A DNA stretch of 34,885 nucleotides. Origin: Polymyxa betae A26-41 (Eukaryota > Protista > Endomyxa: Phytomyxea). A program made the position numbers and the translations under genes. The stretch is from contig RBZT01000934.1 of the NCBI GenBank assembly GCA_003693705.1, positions 1 to 34,885 on the forward strand, written 5' to 3'. Of this stretch, positions 782-23,335 are shown in pieces. The notes below the pieces were generated by a model. It did not search any database. It was not told the origin of the DNA and was given only the letters and a program-made list of their open reading frames with translations. Numbering within the stretch: position 1 is the first letter of the stretch; every line of letters starts with the position of its first letter.

Positions 782-2415
782 ACGTAGCAGGGTCGTTTAA
801 TGCCGGGATGATGGATGTGTATGATCGGCGTAGATTGGTCCGTAGCGCTACTTCCTTGAAAAGGCACATTCGTGTTGTGCTCTGCCACGAAACGTCGTAC
901 TGGCTCGTTTTGCGCTGTGAAAGCTCCATAAATGGGTTTTAGTAAGGCATCCGGTATGTTGGCGATAATTCGTCATGGACAACACAGCAACAGCATGACG
1001 ACGCTGCGGCTGGAGGATGGAGAGCGCTCTTGATAGCGAACAGAGATTCAGGTTGATGGCGTTCGTGGCTTCGCAGGAAAGACGTTTGGCCACAGTAGTA
1101 GTCGAACAAACTACAGAAGTGGTCGTAGGAAGTCGCGCTGGCCCATTGGATTCGGCGCCTCGTTTCAGAGCATACAGCTGGGCGAACAATGCCACAGGTT
1201 GATGATGAACACAGTTACTATGGTAAATTGACTTTGGGAGGGAGACGACGAGAAAGGCAAAGAGAGTGGAGGCAGAAGATGTCATGGAGGCTGTATTCGG
1301 TATTGTCAAAAGCGTGCTGGAGGCAAATAGAATGAGAAATGAATATCTGATTGAAACGGGGAAACAAGCGTAGATACTCCATATACGGTGATGGATGGCT
1401 TTCTATCAGACCGAAAATGTTGCCCATCGAAGACAAAGACGTTTGCTGATTCTCAGGTGGAATCTTGAATTCAGATCGCTCTATTCAGATTGGTGCAAGG
1501 AAGCCTGTCTGAGCGCGTTTCAGAGCGAATGGTGTAAGAGATGCCTGCGATATAGCTTCATCAGCCAATCTACCAATATTGGATGGAACAGCACCGATCC
1601 GTGATTTTCGATTGCAAGGTGAAAACGGGCTGACGTTCACGATTGTGATATTGAATAAGAAGCAAGGTCTGCGGGGTTTCGAATGCCATCCATGGACGTT
1701 CAGGAAGCACCGTGAGGGTTTAGGGTTTCGGACTGGATGACGAGAAAACCGACAAATAGTTTTGTTTGATGAAGTTGTTGACGTTTTTATGGGAATTGAC
1801 AGAGTGCATCTAGAGAATGTGCTCAGATATAGGAATCAGCCGCACTATAGACAGAGCCGCTGGATACCGACGGAAACGTCATCTTAATTGGTGACAGCCA
1901 GATCGACACCGATTTGCGATTTCATGACGAATAAACTGATATATGACATACAGACAATGGCGAATGACGATGTATGAGTGATTATATGCAGATTCAGTAT
2001 CAGACAGATAGCCAAGGCAATTGAGCTGAGCGGATATTTTGAAAGTACCATCAGCTGGTGGTTATTGGCCAGCCGTTCTACGAACACCATTAGGGTTTAG
2101 GGTTGACCCTCTAAATATAAAACGGACCAAGAAAAGCGGGTGACGTGACCGCTTGCTGTAAGCACAAATCTGTCGACGTATCGGTGCCAGTCGCTACGGC
2201 ATAGATTATCACCAGGATGACGGCCACGACAGACGACGTCCTCATCGATGAGATGCGGACCTCGAGTCAGTCGGTAACCCGTAACGTGTTGCAAGTCTCG
2301 CAAGTGCCGCAACACGAGGCGCAGCCCCGGTTACCTTGCCAAGATTCAACTGACTAATCCGAGTGGTGCTTTTTTTAAAAATGATCAAAAAATTCCAACA
2401 TTGAGTGAGCGTATG

Positions 2416-2934
2416 TTAGCAAAGTTGGATGAACTTTTGGGCCCTCGTGAGAGCCATTCCGATGATAGAAGTTACTAGAAGGAGATACAGCAGCATAACG
2501 ATGAATAGCTTGACGTCGAAGCACACCCGAGAACGAACGGATCGATTTCGAAGGATGGCAGGCCGTTCTTCGAAATATGGTTTTGCTAGCAGCGTGAGAA
2601 GGAAAATGATTGAGAGCGTTCGGGTGAGCAGATACGATTTGCTTATCGCCGTAAGAATGAGGATGGTGACCGTATCCGAGCTGGCCAGCATGCAAAGTCT
2701 CCCAATAAGAATGCTCTCATACGAAATCTCAATTGGATGAAGATCCGACATAGTATCTACAAGGCAGATTCAGCCTGATCTTCCGGTCGTCCAATGAGAA
2801 GAGAAGAGACCCATAAAGGCAGGAGCATTCCGATCTGGTCGGATAATGAGAGAATCAACAGCCGGCATGCTGGTCACGAAAGACCCCACCCAGATTATGA
2901 TGAGAGCGAAGATCACGATGCCCCGCGCCAGCAT
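2416..2934 (-). CDS. Small multi-pass membrane protein, 2 exons (2934-2811, 2756-2416); paralogue of 4430-4954
   Basis: Hydrophobic N-terminus MLARGIVIFALIIIW; a 54-nt GT-AG intron (2810-2757) joins in frame to ORF 2416..2751; gapless similarity and same intron position as the gene at 4430. Confidence 0.65.
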
Positions 2935-19799: not shown

Positions 19800-21058
19800 G
19801 GCGCCAGGCTCGATAATCGACGACGTCCAATGACGACTGCATCAGATGCAGCAACAGGCAGAGGCGCTGTGACCGCCTGCACCACGAGAATGTCGTTCTC
19901 GATGGTGAACACAAAATGACGGGCGACACGATCGCTGGAATTTTTTTTTTTTTGAAAAAAAAGGATTTAATCTGCCCTGGTTACGGTAACGTTTAATGTG
20001 GCGATTATCAGTGATCGGAACAGGTTTAGGTCTGTTACGATACACAGACGTGTGAGATCATCTCCGTGATGATAGTCTGGCGTTCGGGTTTCCACACGCA
20101 AGGAAACGTGGCTCTGTGGCGTGAAAGCGATTCAGTAACACCAACTATGATCCCCCCCGTTATCATTTCAGGATAATAAACCTTTTGGAAAATTCGATGA
20201 AAAAAACCTGTTGGTTTTCGATCTGTAACAATAACGGAATCTGTTCCTGGCACAACACGATACCAAGAGACGGCCAGAATTGTTTATTGACTTGAGCATG
20301 ACCAGCGACCGTAACTGCAATCTGCAGAGATGGTCCCCCATGTCAACATTCACTGACTCAAAACCCTGTCTTGCGATGGTCTAAAACCGCATTAGACCGA
20401 GTCCATCAGCGTGATCCACCGCCGCATCCCTGAACGGTTTCGAGTTCGTTCACGAACGTCGTCGGCCAAATCTCTGGAAATCAACATTGGCTCTCTCCTG
20501 TTCTATAGTATATTGTGCAGCCATGCAATCGTGGTCTGGTTTGGTCGTACCCAGTCACTGACAGGACCACTGAGACATACTGGTCCAAAGGTCTTCGTCC
20601 TCAACTGACAGCTCGGCCGATCATCAGACCACGATACATTTCTAACACGAACGAAAAGGACCATCAACAGAGAGTCGAAATTCGTTCACATTTTTTAACA
20701 GATTTTTTACTAAAACTATCAGAGACCCATCAAACTCAATACAGATCGCTCTGGACTTTTTGATCGCCCATCAGACAGCACGACCGGCCCTTTTGGGTGG
20801 TGGGCCAGCACGGCCGGGCAGCAGCAGCAGCAGCAATCATTATCATCCGACCCCGCGGCGTCCTGCGTCTGAGTACAGTCAATCCGGCCGTACCCGACGA
20901 TTCCATGCCGATCTATCCGTCCTCCCTGCGGAGAAATGCAGCTCGCGATCGCCCCCTACCTAGACCTTCGAGTACGGTCCGTTTTTATTTTCTCTCGCGG
21001 TTCGCTGTTCGGGTGACGATTGACGCTGGGCGGAAATTCATCTCGATAACGTTCGGGG

Positions 21059-22894
21059 ATGTCTCGAATCAGCTGGCTGACCGCGGCCGCCTTCGTCGGC
21101 GTCGCCGCCGCCCGTCGTCATCAGGCCCCGGACGAGAAGGCGATCCTGTCGCGATCGATGTCGGAGTCGTTGGCTGAGATCGCGGCCCCGTTCCTGGACA
21201 AGGCCGAGATCGACGCCCTCGTCGACCTGACCGCCCCCAAAGACCAGCTGATCGCCCAGATCGACGGCATGCAGAAGCAGATCATCGCCGAATGCAACCA
21301 GGAGCAGGCCAACTTCGACGCCTGGCTGTCGGCCAAACAGGCCGAACTCTACAACGATCAGCAGCAGGTCACGACGCTGAAGACGCAACAAACGCAGCTG
21401 CAGAATCGCGTCGATCAGATCAAGGGACAGATCACAGGCCTCGGACAGACCCAGACCGATCTCCAGACGAAGCTGGTCTCGGCCAAAGACCTGCTCACGA
21501 CCTTCCAGAAACAGCTGCAGGATGCGACCGATCTGCGCACGAAGACCCGCAACCAGAACCTGGCCACGATCCAGCAGCATCGCGACTCGCTCCAGACGCT
21601 CGCCGATCTCCGCGCTCTGGTCGTCGCCCTTAAGACCGACTCCAACACGGTCCTCGCCAAGTTGAAAGAAGTCCCGACCGGCAACGCCAAGGTCGACGCT
21701 CTTGTCGACACCGTCAAGGCCGAGCTGGCCCGCGCCAAGAACCAGGACCCGCAGATCAAGGCGGACTTGAAGAGCAAGCTGCTGGGTCTGATCGATCAGA
21801 TCTCGTCCGGCGTTCAGGAGTCGCTGAATCTGTACATTCAGCAGGAGACGTTGCAGCAGCAGAAGTTCGAGAACGAGATCCGCCCAGGTCTGGTGCAGAT
21901 GATCGCCCAGGCTCAGACGCAGATCGATTCGTTGCAGGCGCAGCTGGCGCAGGTCCTCGGCCAGATCGGGACGCTGACGACGACGCTGAAACAGGCGCAG
22001 ACCGATCTGGATCAGGCGACGAATCAGCTCCAGACCCTGCTCGGTCTGATCGAATCGCTTCAGGTCCAGATTCAGACCGCCAAGGACGCCCACGCCGTCA
22101 AACAGCAGCGCTGCAAGACCGACCTGGACGCTCTCGAAGTCGTCCGCCAGTTCATCGTCGCCAACATAAACGGTCTCACGCCCGGCAACAACTGCAATCC
22201 GCAGAGTCCGAACTGCGCTCGTTGTCTGTACAACGATCACTGCCAGAACGGCCTCGTCTGTACCGATCAAGGGACGTGCGGAACGCCGCCGACCACGGCG
22301 CCGCCGAAACAGCCCTACTACCAGCTGCTGCCGAAATCGCCGCCCACGGGATGGTCGCAAGGCCGTCGAGTCGACGTCGGCGTCGTCCCTCAATCGTCGT
22401 TCCAGCTCAACGACTTCACGTATATCTTCAAGTATCAGCAGCTGCAGCCGGCCAATGGATGGGCGAATCTGTTCAACGTTCTGAACGTCGGCGATGGATG
22501 GCCGTTCCCGAATCAGGCGGCGCTGTTCCTGTTGAACAACATGTTCGAGATCGACGTCTGCCAGGATGGCGTCGCGTGGCCGAATTCGTATTGGTATCGG
22601 AACTTCTATCTGGATAAGGTCGAGCTGAACACGTGGACGGCCGTCGCCTTCATCGTGTCGGGATCGACGAAGACCGTGACGTTGGCGTACCGTGACGGCG
22701 CCGGCAAGGTCCGCACGCAGGCGTACCCCGACTTCCATGGAAAGCCGCAGAAATGGGGCCCGGGCGCGATCGGCGCCTACGTCAACGGCCGTGGTTATAA
22801 CTCGCTGGTCGCGAACTTCGCCGATTTCCGCAGATACGATCAGGCTCTGGGACCCAACGATGTTCAGGCCGTCTTTAACGAGTTCTTCGCCTAA
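21059..22894 (+). CDS. Secreted 611-aa protein: bipartite coiled coil (trichocyst-matrix/granule-lattice-like) + 6-Cys module + beta-rich (ConA/LamG-like) C-terminal domain
   Basis: Intronless ORF with strong codon bias; signal peptide MSRISWLTAAAFVGVAAA; Q/L-rich heptads to ~aa 370; CNPQSPNCARCLYNDHCQNGLVCTDQGTC; Pro/Thr linker; aromatic beta-type domain ending ANFADFRRYDQALGPNDVQAVF, like the LamG3 'D+R+Y.RAL...EI' end. The CDS is secure; the family call is inference. Confidence 0.85.
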   Translation: MSRISWLTAAAFVGVAAARRHQAPDEKAILSRSMSESLAEIAAPFLDKAEIDALVDLTAPKDQLIAQIDGMQKQIIAECNQEQANFDAWLSAKQAELYNDQQQVTTLKTQQTQLQNRVDQIKGQITGLGQTQTDLQTKLVSAKDLLTTFQKQLQDATDLRTKTRNQNLATIQQHRDSLQTLADLRALVVALKTDSNTVLAKLKEVPTGNAKVDALVDTVKAELARAKNQDPQIKADLKSKLLGLIDQISSGVQESLNLYIQQETLQQQKFENEIRPGLVQMIAQAQTQIDSLQAQLAQVLGQIGTLTTTLKQAQTDLDQATNQLQTLLGLIESLQVQIQTAKDAHAVKQQRCKTDLDALEVVRQFIVANINGLTPGNNCNPQSPNCARCLYNDHCQNGLVCTDQGTCGTPPTTAPPKQPYYQLLPKSPPTGWSQGRRVDVGVVPQSSFQLNDFTYIFKYQQLQPANGWANLFNVLNVGDGWPFPNQAALFLLNNMFEIDVCQDGVAWPNSYWYRNFYLDKVELNTWTAVAFIVSGSTKTVTLAYRDGAGKVRTQAYPDFHGKPQKWGPGAIGAYVNGRGYNSLVANFADFRRYDQALGPNDVQAVFNEFFA

Positions 22895-23335
22895 TTCGGA
22901 CGGCTCTGCATTTACTTGAAATAAATTTAGCTTTTTGATCTTCGATGTGTCATCCAAAGGAAGAGGAGTTTTGTATAGTTAGCAACCTGTATGAAGTTTA
23001 CCAGACCCAATTCCGAGAAATCGCTAATTCAATCTGAAATGGAGCGAAGTATTAACAAAAGTCACTAAAGGGATATTTACTATTTAGGAACCATTCAATT
23101 GGAGCATTCAATAACTGAAATAAACCCTATCTGAGCGGTATTTCTTCTTCAAGCAATTAGTGAATTACAAACTCAAATCTATTAGAGACATGGAAACTGT
23201 TGGAATCCCTTGCTTGGATGAAGGATGTCCATTGCCTTTGCAGCAGTGAGTCCTAATCGAAAGGTCTCCTAAGAAGCGATCACGAAACAGGGATGGCCTT
23301 CCAAAGGTGGGTGTCTTGTCGCATTTATTTGGAAT

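What the first reader, a model, noticed from the sequence alone, without database searches (positions are those of the whole stretch)
21059..22894. Trichocyst-matrix/granule-lattice-like secreted protein with a beta-rich tip: candidate building block of a host-penetration extrusome
Seen: signal peptide, then two similar long amphipathic units (QLIAQIDGMQKQII...TDLRTKTRNQNLATIQQHRDSLQTLADLRALVVAL; LLGLIDQISSGVQESL...QETLQQQKF...QQRCKTDLDALEVVRQFI) separated by a short spacer, then a 6-Cys module and a ConA/LamG-like domain. Known: Paramecium trichocyst matrix proteins and Tetrahymena Grl proteins are secreted precursors with two coiled-coil units that form expandable lattices, and phytomyxid cysts pierce plant walls with the Rohr/Stachel apparatus, whose proteins are poorly characterised. 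Inference: this may be a lattice protein of such an extrusome carrying a carbohydrate-binding end. The resemblance is from recall, and coiled coils can converge.
Basis: partly seen in the sequence, partly recalled or inferred. Interest (0 to 1): 0.8.

Follow-up and report, generated by a model that had tools for sequence, protein, structure and literature searches.

The report
Trichocyst-matrix-like secreted protein with lectin tip
A root parasite of sugar beet (almost certainly Polymyxa betae) encodes a secreted protein whose long two-helix body looks related to the spring-like trichocyst matrix proteins of ciliates and ends in a sugar-binding-type domain, giving a first testable candidate for its attachment or penetration machinery, whose role remains unproven.

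Summary
The ORF at 21059-22894 (+) is real, intact, single-exon and under protein-level constraint.

The recalled resemblance to trichocyst matrix proteins held up in three tests.
- Language-model searches with two paralogues only 25% identical both returned ciliate TMP clusters (Pfam PF27870 T1-F).
- A profile of the helical domain found one significant hit among the 8000 candidates scored from a 5.8-billion-protein collection, a PF27870 protein.
- Profile-profile alignment to PF27870 proteins is collinear over 277 columns. It scores 42, against 24 or less for reversed and heptad-shuffled controls.

The genome holds five paralogues with swappable ends: none, Cys knot only, Cys knot plus SUEL lectin, and Cys knot plus ConA-like domain (two genes).

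Not shown: direct alignment to ciliate TMP or Grl sequences, expression, processing, localisation, or any link to the Rohr/Stachel. Similarity between the two helical units is barely above coiled-coil background.

Verdict: a new variant of a known family, the first in a phytomyxid in what I could search. The extrusome role is speculative. Another first-reader note (s1-674219) flagged a similar gene elsewhere in this genome.

The parts
21059..22894 (+). Complete single-exon gene, 611 codons plus stop
   Evidence: ORF list. Codon-position pattern against paralogue C256. Domain hits occur only in this frame.
21059..21115 (+). Probable signal peptide, aa 1 to about 19
   Evidence: Hydrophobic core at aa 4-18, with the maximum Kyte-Doolittle 11-residue mean at 2.08. 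All five paralogues have the same feature. The cleavage site was not predicted with a dedicated tool.
21143..22174 (+). TMP-like (PF27870 T1-F-like) helical domain, aa 29-372, conserved in all five paralogues
   Evidence: Alignments A1, A2 and A6. Atlas feature hits. HMM and hhalign tests with controls.
21239..21634 (+). Long helix 1, aa 61-192, preceded by an invariant Pro60
   Evidence: AlphaFold2 DSSP with pLDDT 78-97. Pro60 is invariant in A6 and aligns with the invariant Pro32 of the PF27870 set.
21635..21748 (+). Spacer or turn between the helices, aa 193-230. It is variable and carries indels among paralogues. If the protein matures like a ciliate TMP, this would be the processing region (inference).
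   Evidence: Lower pLDDT (63-81) and short helices only. Indels in A1 and A6.
21749..22165 (+). Long helix 2, aa 231-369
   Evidence: AlphaFold2 DSSP with pLDDT 82-97.
21293..21295 (+). Cys79, candidate partner of Cys352
   Evidence: The two cysteines are present together in C45, C256 and C966. Both are absent in C675 and C263. In an antiparallel hairpin of helices 61-192 and 231-369, residue 79 lies opposite about residue 351. This is inference from the helix boundaries.
22112..22114 (+). Cys352, candidate partner of Cys79
   Evidence: Same evidence as for Cys79.
22193..22279 (+). 6-Cys module, aa 379-407, with spacing C-x6-C-x2-C-x5-C-x5-C-x5-C
   Evidence: Cys positions. Conserved in four of the five paralogues. 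No family assignment: the only matches are weak ones to bacterial Cys-rich repeats.
22280..22366 (+). Pro/Thr-rich basic linker, aa 408-436
   Evidence: Read from the sequence; pI 10.0. pLDDT is below 50.
22367..22891 (+). ConA-like (Laminin_G_3-type) C-terminal domain, aa 437-611, with one conserved unpaired Cys501
   Evidence: Laminin_G_3 at E 1.2e-4, below the cut-off. phmmer hit to the LamG_3 protein P0004. Shared motifs in A5. In this genome the domain occurs only here and in C256. The AlphaFold2 model is poor, with pLDDT 46.

Best explanation
The gene encodes a secreted, mildly acidic structural protein.

Its first roughly 345 mature residues belong to, or are a divergent offshoot of, the trichocyst-matrix-protein family (Pfam PF27870 T1-F). 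They form two helices of about 135 residues each that fold back on each other as a long antiparallel hairpin. The hairpin is probably stapled near its open end by a Cys79-Cys352 disulfide.

This scaffold is joined through a small six-cysteine knot and a flexible Pro/Thr linker to a ConA-like (LamG_3-type) domain that most likely binds a glycan.

The gene is one of at least five paralogues in what is almost certainly the Polymyxa betae genome. All share the same scaffold but carry different ends: none, Cys knot only, Cys knot plus SUEL galactose/rhamnose-type lectin, and Cys knot plus ConA-like domain (two genes).

Most likely mode of action, by inference and by analogy with ciliate TMP/Grl proteins:
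- The proteins are packed together in a regulated secretory vesicle of the zoospore or cyst stage.
- On discharge they assemble or expand into a fibrous or lattice matrix.
- The lectin-type tips anchor that matrix to carbohydrates of the host root wall or of the parasite's own cyst wall.

Shown here: the gene, its architecture, the paralogue family, and sequence-level kinship with PF27870 proteins.
Inferred: the hairpin disulfide, co-assembly, glycan binding, the life-cycle stage and the organelle.
For: Gene and constraint.

Architecture.

Family of five with modular ends: (SUEL_Lectin at 54.6 bits against a 31.4-bit cut-off).

TMP kinship:
- Atlas feature search gave 0.93 with 208/256 shared features and 26 of 30 hits in PF27870.
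- With the 25%-identical paralogue it gave 0.95, 220/256 and 29 of 30.
- A profile of the helical domains had a single hit at E<=0.01 among the 8000 most word-similar proteins. That hit carries PF27870 (E 9e-4 for 5.8e9 sequences, 37 bits).
- The same profile hits 120 of 120 PF27870 proteins (17-51 bits) and 0 of 120 reversed decoys.
- hhalign scored 42.3 over 277 collinear columns. Reversed controls scored 18.6-20.3 and heptad-block shuffles at most 24.3.
- The alignment pairs the invariant Pro before helix 1 and an F-N motif early in helix 2.

Coiled-coil background:
- Against 177,635 PDB sequences the profile reaches only 22.3 bits, in short stretches.
- No other coiled-coil gene of the genome matches at E<=0.1.

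Acidity: pI 4.4-6.05 in all five members.

Organism: the genome has 1001 contigs and 27,085,814 b. The published P. betae draft has 1,001 contigs and 27,085,946 bp (PMC6328671).
Against: - The Pfam model PF27870 itself could not be run, and no ciliate TMP or Grl sequence could be aligned directly.
- The PF27870 proteins used come from one narrow marine-protist subfamily.
- The reciprocal profile search is weak. It gives 12 bits for this protein and finds nothing in the six-frame genome search.
- Generic coiled-coil models can score this protein well. NCBIfam SMC_prok_B gives 32 bits over aa 74-350.
- Structure searches return only generic long helical hairpins (MCP, Rad50) with TM below 0.4.
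- The C-terminal fold is modelled poorly and the Pfam hit is below threshold.
- No shared upstream motif suggests co-regulation.
Confidence: 0.55

Rival explanations
1. Convergent coiled-coil lectin. The helical region would be a generic oligomerising coiled coil with no common descent from TMPs. It would serve only to multimerise the lectin-type domains, as the necks of collectins or tetranectin do. The protein would then be a soluble multivalent lectin, adhesin or effector.
For: - Coiled-coil models such as SMC score 32 bits on this protein.
- The reciprocal PF27870-subset profile is weak.
- Similarity between the two internal units is at background level.
- Fold searches are generic.
- Lectin-type ends are present.
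Against: - Two divergent paralogues each return almost only TMP clusters and no other coiled-coil family.
- The match to PF27870 proteins is collinear across the domain and well above reversed, shuffled and PDB coiled-coil controls.
- Two paralogues keep the scaffold without any lectin, so the scaffold has a role of its own.
Confidence: 0.18
2. One reading: the family is the building material of the Rohr/Stachel (or adhesorium) of the encysted zoospore. The phytomyxid penetration apparatus would then be a derived extrusome built from TMP-type lattice proteins, with tips that bind the host wall.
For: - TMP kinship.
- Phytomyxids have a projectile-like Stachel inside a Rohr whose proteins are uncharacterised (PMC4815078; PMC9944879).
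- SUEL-type and ConA-type ends could bind pectic or other wall glycans (the glycan targets are inference).
Against: - There is no stage-specific expression, proteomic or localisation evidence.
- Penetration is described as driven by enlargement of the cyst vacuole (PMC4815078). No lattice expansion is described.
- With only five genes, the family could equally serve a cyst coat or an adhesive.
Confidence: 0.15
3. Wall or coat protein. The proteins would be discharged at encystment, or laid down in resting spores, as a structural layer. The lectin ends would bind the parasite's own wall polysaccharides such as chitin or glucans.
For: - The protein is secreted, acidic and built to self-associate.
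- There is an odd number of cysteines, with a conserved unpaired Cys in the ConA-like domain that could cross-link.
- In a scuticociliate, exposure to immune serum leads to a mucoid capsule, and the study examined the role of extrusomes in it (abstract of bioRxiv 10.1101/607622).
Against: No evidence on stage or ligand. Nothing distinguishes this reading from the adhesive-matrix reading.
Confidence: 0.1
4. Not a real gene: a chance ORF, or the antisense ORF (21038-22957, minus strand, 639 aa) is the true product.
For: A codon-aligned antisense ORF spans the whole gene.
Against: - GC3 is 0.83 in the + frame.
- Third-position differences dominate against the paralogue.
- 194 of 324 conserved residues use different codons.
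- The signal peptide and the domain hits are all in the + frame.
- The antisense ORF is what a CAG-rich (67 CAG codons), high-GC3 gene would be expected to give.
Confidence: 0.02

Closest known systems
Ciliate trichocyst matrix proteins (Paramecium TMPs; Pfam PF27870 T1-F)
   Same: - It is a secretory precursor with a signal peptide, about 350-370 aa of helical, heptad-rich and acidic sequence in two long segments separated by a spacer, and belongs to a multigene family.
- The nearest Atlas clusters are ciliate TMPs of 359-368 aa.
- There is profile-level similarity to PF27870 proteins above coiled-coil controls.
   Different: - It comes from a rhizarian plant parasite, not an alveolate.
- There are only five genes. 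From my own knowledge, Paramecium has a very large family.
- Three of the five carry lectin-type C-terminal domains, which I did not see in any PF27870 protein retrieved.
- Processing, crystallinity and calcium-triggered expansion are unknown.
- No direct alignment to ciliate sequences was possible.
Marine-protist PF27870 proteins (P0005 family; 3872 hits at E<=0.001)
   Same: They have a signal peptide, a collinear helical domain, an invariant Pro before helix 1, an F-N motif in helix 2, and cysteines near both ends of the domain.
   Different: - Sequence identity is about 17-24%.
- Many are about 670 aa with a second helical half rather than a lectin.
- Their organisms and functions are unknown to me.
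Tetrahymena mucocyst cargo: Grl lattice proteins together with Grt1/Igr1 tip proteins (own knowledge; Grl1p abstract in PMC2133959)
   Same: The design has the same logic: acidic lattice-forming proteins together with beta-rich, possibly glycan-binding proteins in one secretory granule.
   Different: In Tetrahymena the lattice function and the beta-rich function sit on separate proteins, and the beta-rich domains are beta/gamma-crystallin type. Here the scaffold and a ConA-like or SUEL domain are fused in one chain. Kinship to Grl was not tested.
Collectin- or tetranectin-type oligomeric lectins
   Same: A helical oligomerising region followed by a carbohydrate-recognition domain, which would give multivalent glycan binding. 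This is a functional analogy only.
   Different: There is no collagen region and no C-type lectin domain. The helical part is ten times longer and folds back as a hairpin. It is not a member.

Membership tests
Trichocyst matrix protein family (Pfam PF27870 T1-F) | Hit of the curated PF27870 HMM above its gathering score | not testable with these tools
   PF27870 is absent from the local Pfam copy. It appears only as precomputed labels on database proteins and Atlas clusters.
Trichocyst matrix protein family (Pfam PF27870 T1-F) | Profile-level, collinear sequence similarity to proteins that carry PF27870, above coiled-coil background | tested here: met
   - HMM hit at E 9e-4 against 5.8e9 sequences.
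- 120 of 120 real proteins hit, against 0 of 120 reversed.
- hhalign 42.3 over 277 columns, against 24.3 or less in controls.
- PDB coiled coils reach at most 22.3 bits.
- Caveat: the reciprocal profile is weak.
Trichocyst matrix protein family (Pfam PF27870 T1-F) | Similarity to ciliate TMPs themselves | tested here: inconclusive
   Only language-model feature similarity is available: 0.93 and 0.95, with 208 and 220 of 256 features, and 26 and 29 of the 30 nearest clusters. No ciliate sequence could be fetched for alignment.
Trichocyst matrix protein family (Pfam PF27870 T1-F) | Secretory precursor with an N-terminal signal peptide | tested here: met
   A hydrophobic N-terminus is present in all five paralogues. 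No dedicated predictor was available.
Trichocyst matrix protein family (Pfam PF27870 T1-F) | Two long helical, heptad-rich segments separated by a spacer; acidic | tested here: met
   Helices at 61-192 and 231-369. The helical domain has pI 5.27 and the family ranges from 4.4 to 6.05. Homology between the two units is not demonstrated.
Trichocyst matrix protein family (Pfam PF27870 T1-F) | Proteolytic maturation into small polypeptides that crystallise in a dense-core extrusive organelle and expand on discharge | not testable with these tools
   This needs biochemistry and microscopy. The feature is described in the abstract of PMC2119969.
Tetrahymena granule lattice (Grl) proteins | Sequence kinship to Grl1-8 | not tested
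Concanavalin A-like / Laminin_G_3 (PF13385) | Pfam hit above the gathering score | tested here: not met
   The scores are 21.5-22.7 bits against a 27.6-bit cut-off, at E 1.2e-4 to 2.8e-4, covering only profile positions 72-151.
Concanavalin A-like / Laminin_G_3 (PF13385) | Independent similarity to a bona fide member, and shared motifs | tested here: met
   - Exhaustive phmmer gives E 3.9e-4 against P0004.
- P0004 is a Laminin_G_3 protein at E 9.4e-53.
- Both share an L-N-T-W-T motif followed within a few residues by S-G, and the terminal D-x-R-x-Y-x-x-A-L motif.
Concanavalin A-like / Laminin_G_3 (PF13385) | Beta-sandwich jelly-roll fold | tested here: inconclusive
   AlphaFold2 gives pLDDT 46 and pTM 0.49. 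Foldseek finds no hit at E<=0.001. The weak list is dominated by ConA-like lectin folds.
SUEL / rhamnose-binding lectin (PF02140), paralogue on contig C675 only | Pfam hit above the gathering score | tested here: met
   54.6 bits against a 31.4-bit cut-off, E 1.5e-14, covering the full profile 1-80.

The most novel reading that the evidence does not exclude
The five TMP-like proteins would be the stored matrix of the phytomyxid infection apparatus (Stachel, Rohr or adhesorium). The organelle that shoots the parasite into a root hair would then be a derived extrusome sharing ancestry with alveolate trichocysts, and its lectin tips would decide which host wall it grips.
Probability: 0.15. Interest if true: 0.85.

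Novelty: new variant of a known kind. Interest (0 to 1): 0.6.

Why it matters
The proteins of the plasmodiophorid attachment and penetration apparatus are unknown. This matters because these parasites cause clubroot and powdery scab and carry rhizomania virus.

A small, clearly defined family of secreted TMP-type scaffolds with interchangeable lectin-type tips gives concrete candidates for antibodies, stage-specific expression studies and glycan-binding assays.

The finding also bears on an old question in protistology: whether extrusive organelles of distant eukaryotes share components. A TMP-family protein in Rhizaria would extend the family's range beyond alveolates. In the held literature, no paper connects trichocyst matrix proteins with phytomyxids.

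Tried and rejected
- Whole-protein word-index search: no hit.
- Exhaustive search with the C-terminal 242 aa. It returned only a 55-aa fragment at 65% identity (P0002, whose DNA was not retrievable), a LamG_3 protein, a bacterial Cys-rich repeat protein, and a spurious Ig-repeat hit.
- Two metagenome scans: empty.
- PF27870 as a family query: not in the library.
- PF27870-subset profile against the own genome: nothing.
- Structure searches. The Atlas by-structure search and my own model both gave generic helical hairpins with TM below 0.4. The C-terminal model was too poor for Foldseek.
- Homodimer prediction of the helical domain: no verdict, neither for nor against.
- Shared upstream k-mers among the five genes: none beyond shuffles.
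No read evidence was obtained, read laying was not used, and I did not seek that evidence with any other tool.
- Assignment of the Cys module. Only a weak resemblance to the Cys-rich repeats of myxobacterial TraA (E 0.014) was found, so it is left unassigned.
- True internal duplication of the two helical units: not supported beyond coiled-coil background.
- A ciliate contaminant as the source of the AT-rich paralogue C966: rejected. The ORF is intact under the standard code, with 51 CAA/CAG Gln codons and no in-frame TAA or TAG.
Full report
**What is there**

The window holds an uninterrupted 611-codon ORF at 21059-22894 on the + strand. It is the longest ORF in the window and sits between AT-richer non-coding flanks. 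A codon-aligned antisense ORF of 639 aa covers it, but the + frame is the coding one:
- GC3 is 0.83.
- Against the 54%-identical paralogue on contig C256, differences by codon position are 0.37/0.28/0.66.
- 194 of 324 identical residues are encoded by different codons.

The antisense ORF is what a gene with 67 CAG codons would be expected to give.

**Organism**

The assembly has 1001 contigs and 27,085,814 bases. I take the genome to be that plasmodiophorid, an obligate root endoparasite of beet.

**Anatomy**

- The N-terminus is a typical hydrophobic signal sequence.
- AlphaFold2, run with the four-paralogue alignment, predicts two very long helices at aa 61-192 and 231-369 with pLDDT 80-97.
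- A less confident spacer at aa 193-230 joins the helices, and it carries indels among paralogues.
- The Atlas structure neighbours are long antiparallel hairpins (MCP signalling domains, Rad50 arms) with low TM. That is compatible with a fold-back hairpin but not diagnostic.
- Cys79 and Cys352 occur together in three paralogues, and both are missing in the other two. With the predicted helix boundaries, residue 79 would face about residue 351 in an antiparallel hairpin. A stapling disulfide is therefore a reasonable inference.
- After helix 2 come six cysteines at 379-407, conserved in four of the five paralogues.
- A basic Pro/Thr linker follows, and then 175 residues of beta-rich sequence.

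**The C-terminal domain**

Pfam Laminin_G_3 matches below threshold (22.7 bits against 27.6). Independent support comes from an exhaustive phmmer search of 1.84 billion representatives. It found a bacterial protein (E 3.9e-4) that is itself a clear Laminin_G_3 protein (E 9.4e-53). The alignment shows the family's characteristic C-terminal motifs.

The fold could not be confirmed. The AlphaFold2 model has pLDDT 46, and Foldseek found nothing at E<=0.001, although the weak list is dominated by ConA-like lectin folds. I accept "ConA-like/LamG_3-type" as likely. Glycan binding is inferred.

**A family with interchangeable ends**

Six-frame searches of the genome found five members:

| Contig | Length | Ends with |
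|---|---|---|
| C45 (this gene) | 611 aa | Cys knot + ConA-like domain |
| C256 | 616 aa | Cys knot + ConA-like domain |
| C675 | about 496 aa | Cys knot + SUEL lectin domain (54.6 bits against a 31.4-bit cut-off) |
| C263 | 382 aa | Cys knot only |
| C966 | 370 aa | Nothing after the helical domain |

The ConA-like domain occurs nowhere else in the genome. All five are acidic, with pI 4.4-6.05. The constant part is the helical scaffold, and the variable part is a lectin-type tip. That argues the scaffold has a function of its own and that the tips provide binding specificity.

**Is the scaffold related to trichocyst matrix proteins?**

1. *Language-model features.* A search with aa 25-378 returned ciliate "Trichocyst matrix protein" clusters carrying Pfam PF27870 (T1-F) as 26 of the 30 nearest clusters. 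The best score was 0.93, with 208 of 256 shared features. Repeating it with the helical domain of C675, only 25% identical and less Gln-rich, gave 0.95, 220 of 256, and 29 of 30.

2. *Profile search.* A profile of the four helical domains, scored against the 8000 most word-similar proteins of a 5.8-billion-sequence collection, gave exactly one hit at E<=0.01. It is a 388-aa secreted protein labelled PF27870 (E 9e-4, 37 bits). That protein heads a large marine-protist family, with 3872 hits.

3. *Decoys.* Offline, the same profile hit all 120 retrieved PF27870 proteins (17-51 bits) and none of their 120 reversed copies.

4. *Profile-profile alignment.* Aligning my family to 20 of these proteins runs collinearly over 277 columns, from the invariant Pro before helix 1 to the cysteine near the end of helix 2. 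It scores 42.3. Reversed alignments score 18.6-20.3, and 60 heptad-block shuffles score at most 24.3.

As further background checks, the profile reaches only 22.3 bits on short stretches of PDB coiled coils. It also matches no other coiled-coil gene in the parasite's genome at E<=0.1.

**Cautions**

- The Pfam model itself is not in the local library.
- No ciliate TMP or Tetrahymena Grl sequence could be fetched for alignment.
- The reciprocal profile, built from a narrow subfamily, gives this protein only 12 bits and finds nothing in the genome search.
- A generic SMC model scores the protein at 32 bits, which shows how far coiled-coil similarity alone can go.
- The two helical units are not demonstrably duplicates of each other: the score is 50 against 40-43 for reversed controls.

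Weighing all this, I put common descent with the PF27870 family at about 0.8.

**How it probably works**

In ciliates, TMP precursors are sorted to trichocysts and cleaved into small acidic polypeptides. These crystallise and expand explosively on discharge (abstract of PMC2119969; bioRxiv 10.1101/2024.08.22.609204).

By analogy, I propose that the five P. betae proteins are co-packaged in a regulated secretory vesicle. On release they would form a fibrous or lattice matrix, and the ConA-like and SUEL tips would anchor it to carbohydrates.

The target could be the root-hair wall. Zoospore attachment is the critical and mechanistically unknown first step in plasmodiophorid infection (PMC9944879). 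The target could also be the parasite's own cyst wall.

That remains possible, but nothing here supports it. Published descriptions attribute firing to enlargement of the cyst vacuole (PMC4815078). I give it about 0.15.

**Known or new**

The scaffold belongs to a known kind, the TMP/PF27870 family. Three things appear new:
- The lineage: a rhizarian plant parasite.
- The small family size.
- The fusion to lectin-type tips through a disulfide knot.

No paper in the held library links trichocyst matrix proteins with Plasmodiophora or Phytomyxea. No close homologue was found in the protein and metagenome collections beyond one 55-aa fragment.

Another first-reader note of this scan (s1-674219) flagged a similar secreted coiled-coil protein with a Cys-rich tip on another piece of this genome. 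It probably corresponds to one of the paralogues I found independently.

**Limits**

No spliced model was needed, because the gene is a single exon. The homodimer prediction returned no verdict and is not used as evidence.

Noticed in passing
window 21038-22957 (-): A 639-aa antisense ORF, exactly codon-aligned with the gene, gives an Arg/Leu-rich product. It looks like a by-product of the CAG-rich, high-GC3 coding strand rather than a gene.
   Followed up: partly
window 21059-22891; L002 1477-3324; L003 1219-2709; L009 799-1944; L004 1375-2484: GC3 of the five paralogues ranges from 0.83 (C45) through 0.62, 0.44 and 0.44 to 0.26 (C966). It follows the GC of the flanking DNA, which runs from about 0.50 down to 0.34. 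The genome therefore has strong regional compositional heterogeneity. The assembly was binned from a mixed sample, so stray contigs cannot be fully excluded.
   Followed up: partly
L003 (G000:C675) 1219-2709 (-): This paralogue ends in a bona fide SUEL (galactose/rhamnose-type) lectin domain instead of the ConA-like domain. The Y-G and D-P-C-x-G-T-x-K motif positions are visible.
   Followed up: partly
L009 (G000:C263) 799-1947 (+): This is the fifth and most divergent family member. It is Asp/Glu-rich rather than Gln-rich and ends right after the 6-Cys knot.
   Followed up: partly
window 22559-22561 (Cys501) and the equivalent Cys508 of L002: Both ConA-like paralogues have nine cysteines. That leaves one conserved unpaired Cys inside the ConA-like domain, a possible site for intermolecular cross-linking.
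   Followed up: no
L002 4072-4731 (-): The ORF next to the C256 paralogue looks by eye like the C-terminal part of a eukaryotic phosphomannomutase. This was not tested.
   Followed up: no
proteins P0005-P0124 (no window coordinates): A very large family of PF27870-labelled secreted proteins comes from marine eukaryote catalogues and JGI contigs of about 2.1 kb. There were 3872 hits at E<=0.001. Many are about 670 aa with two helical halves, each ending in a cysteine-containing motif. Their organisms and functions are unknown to me.
   Followed up: partly
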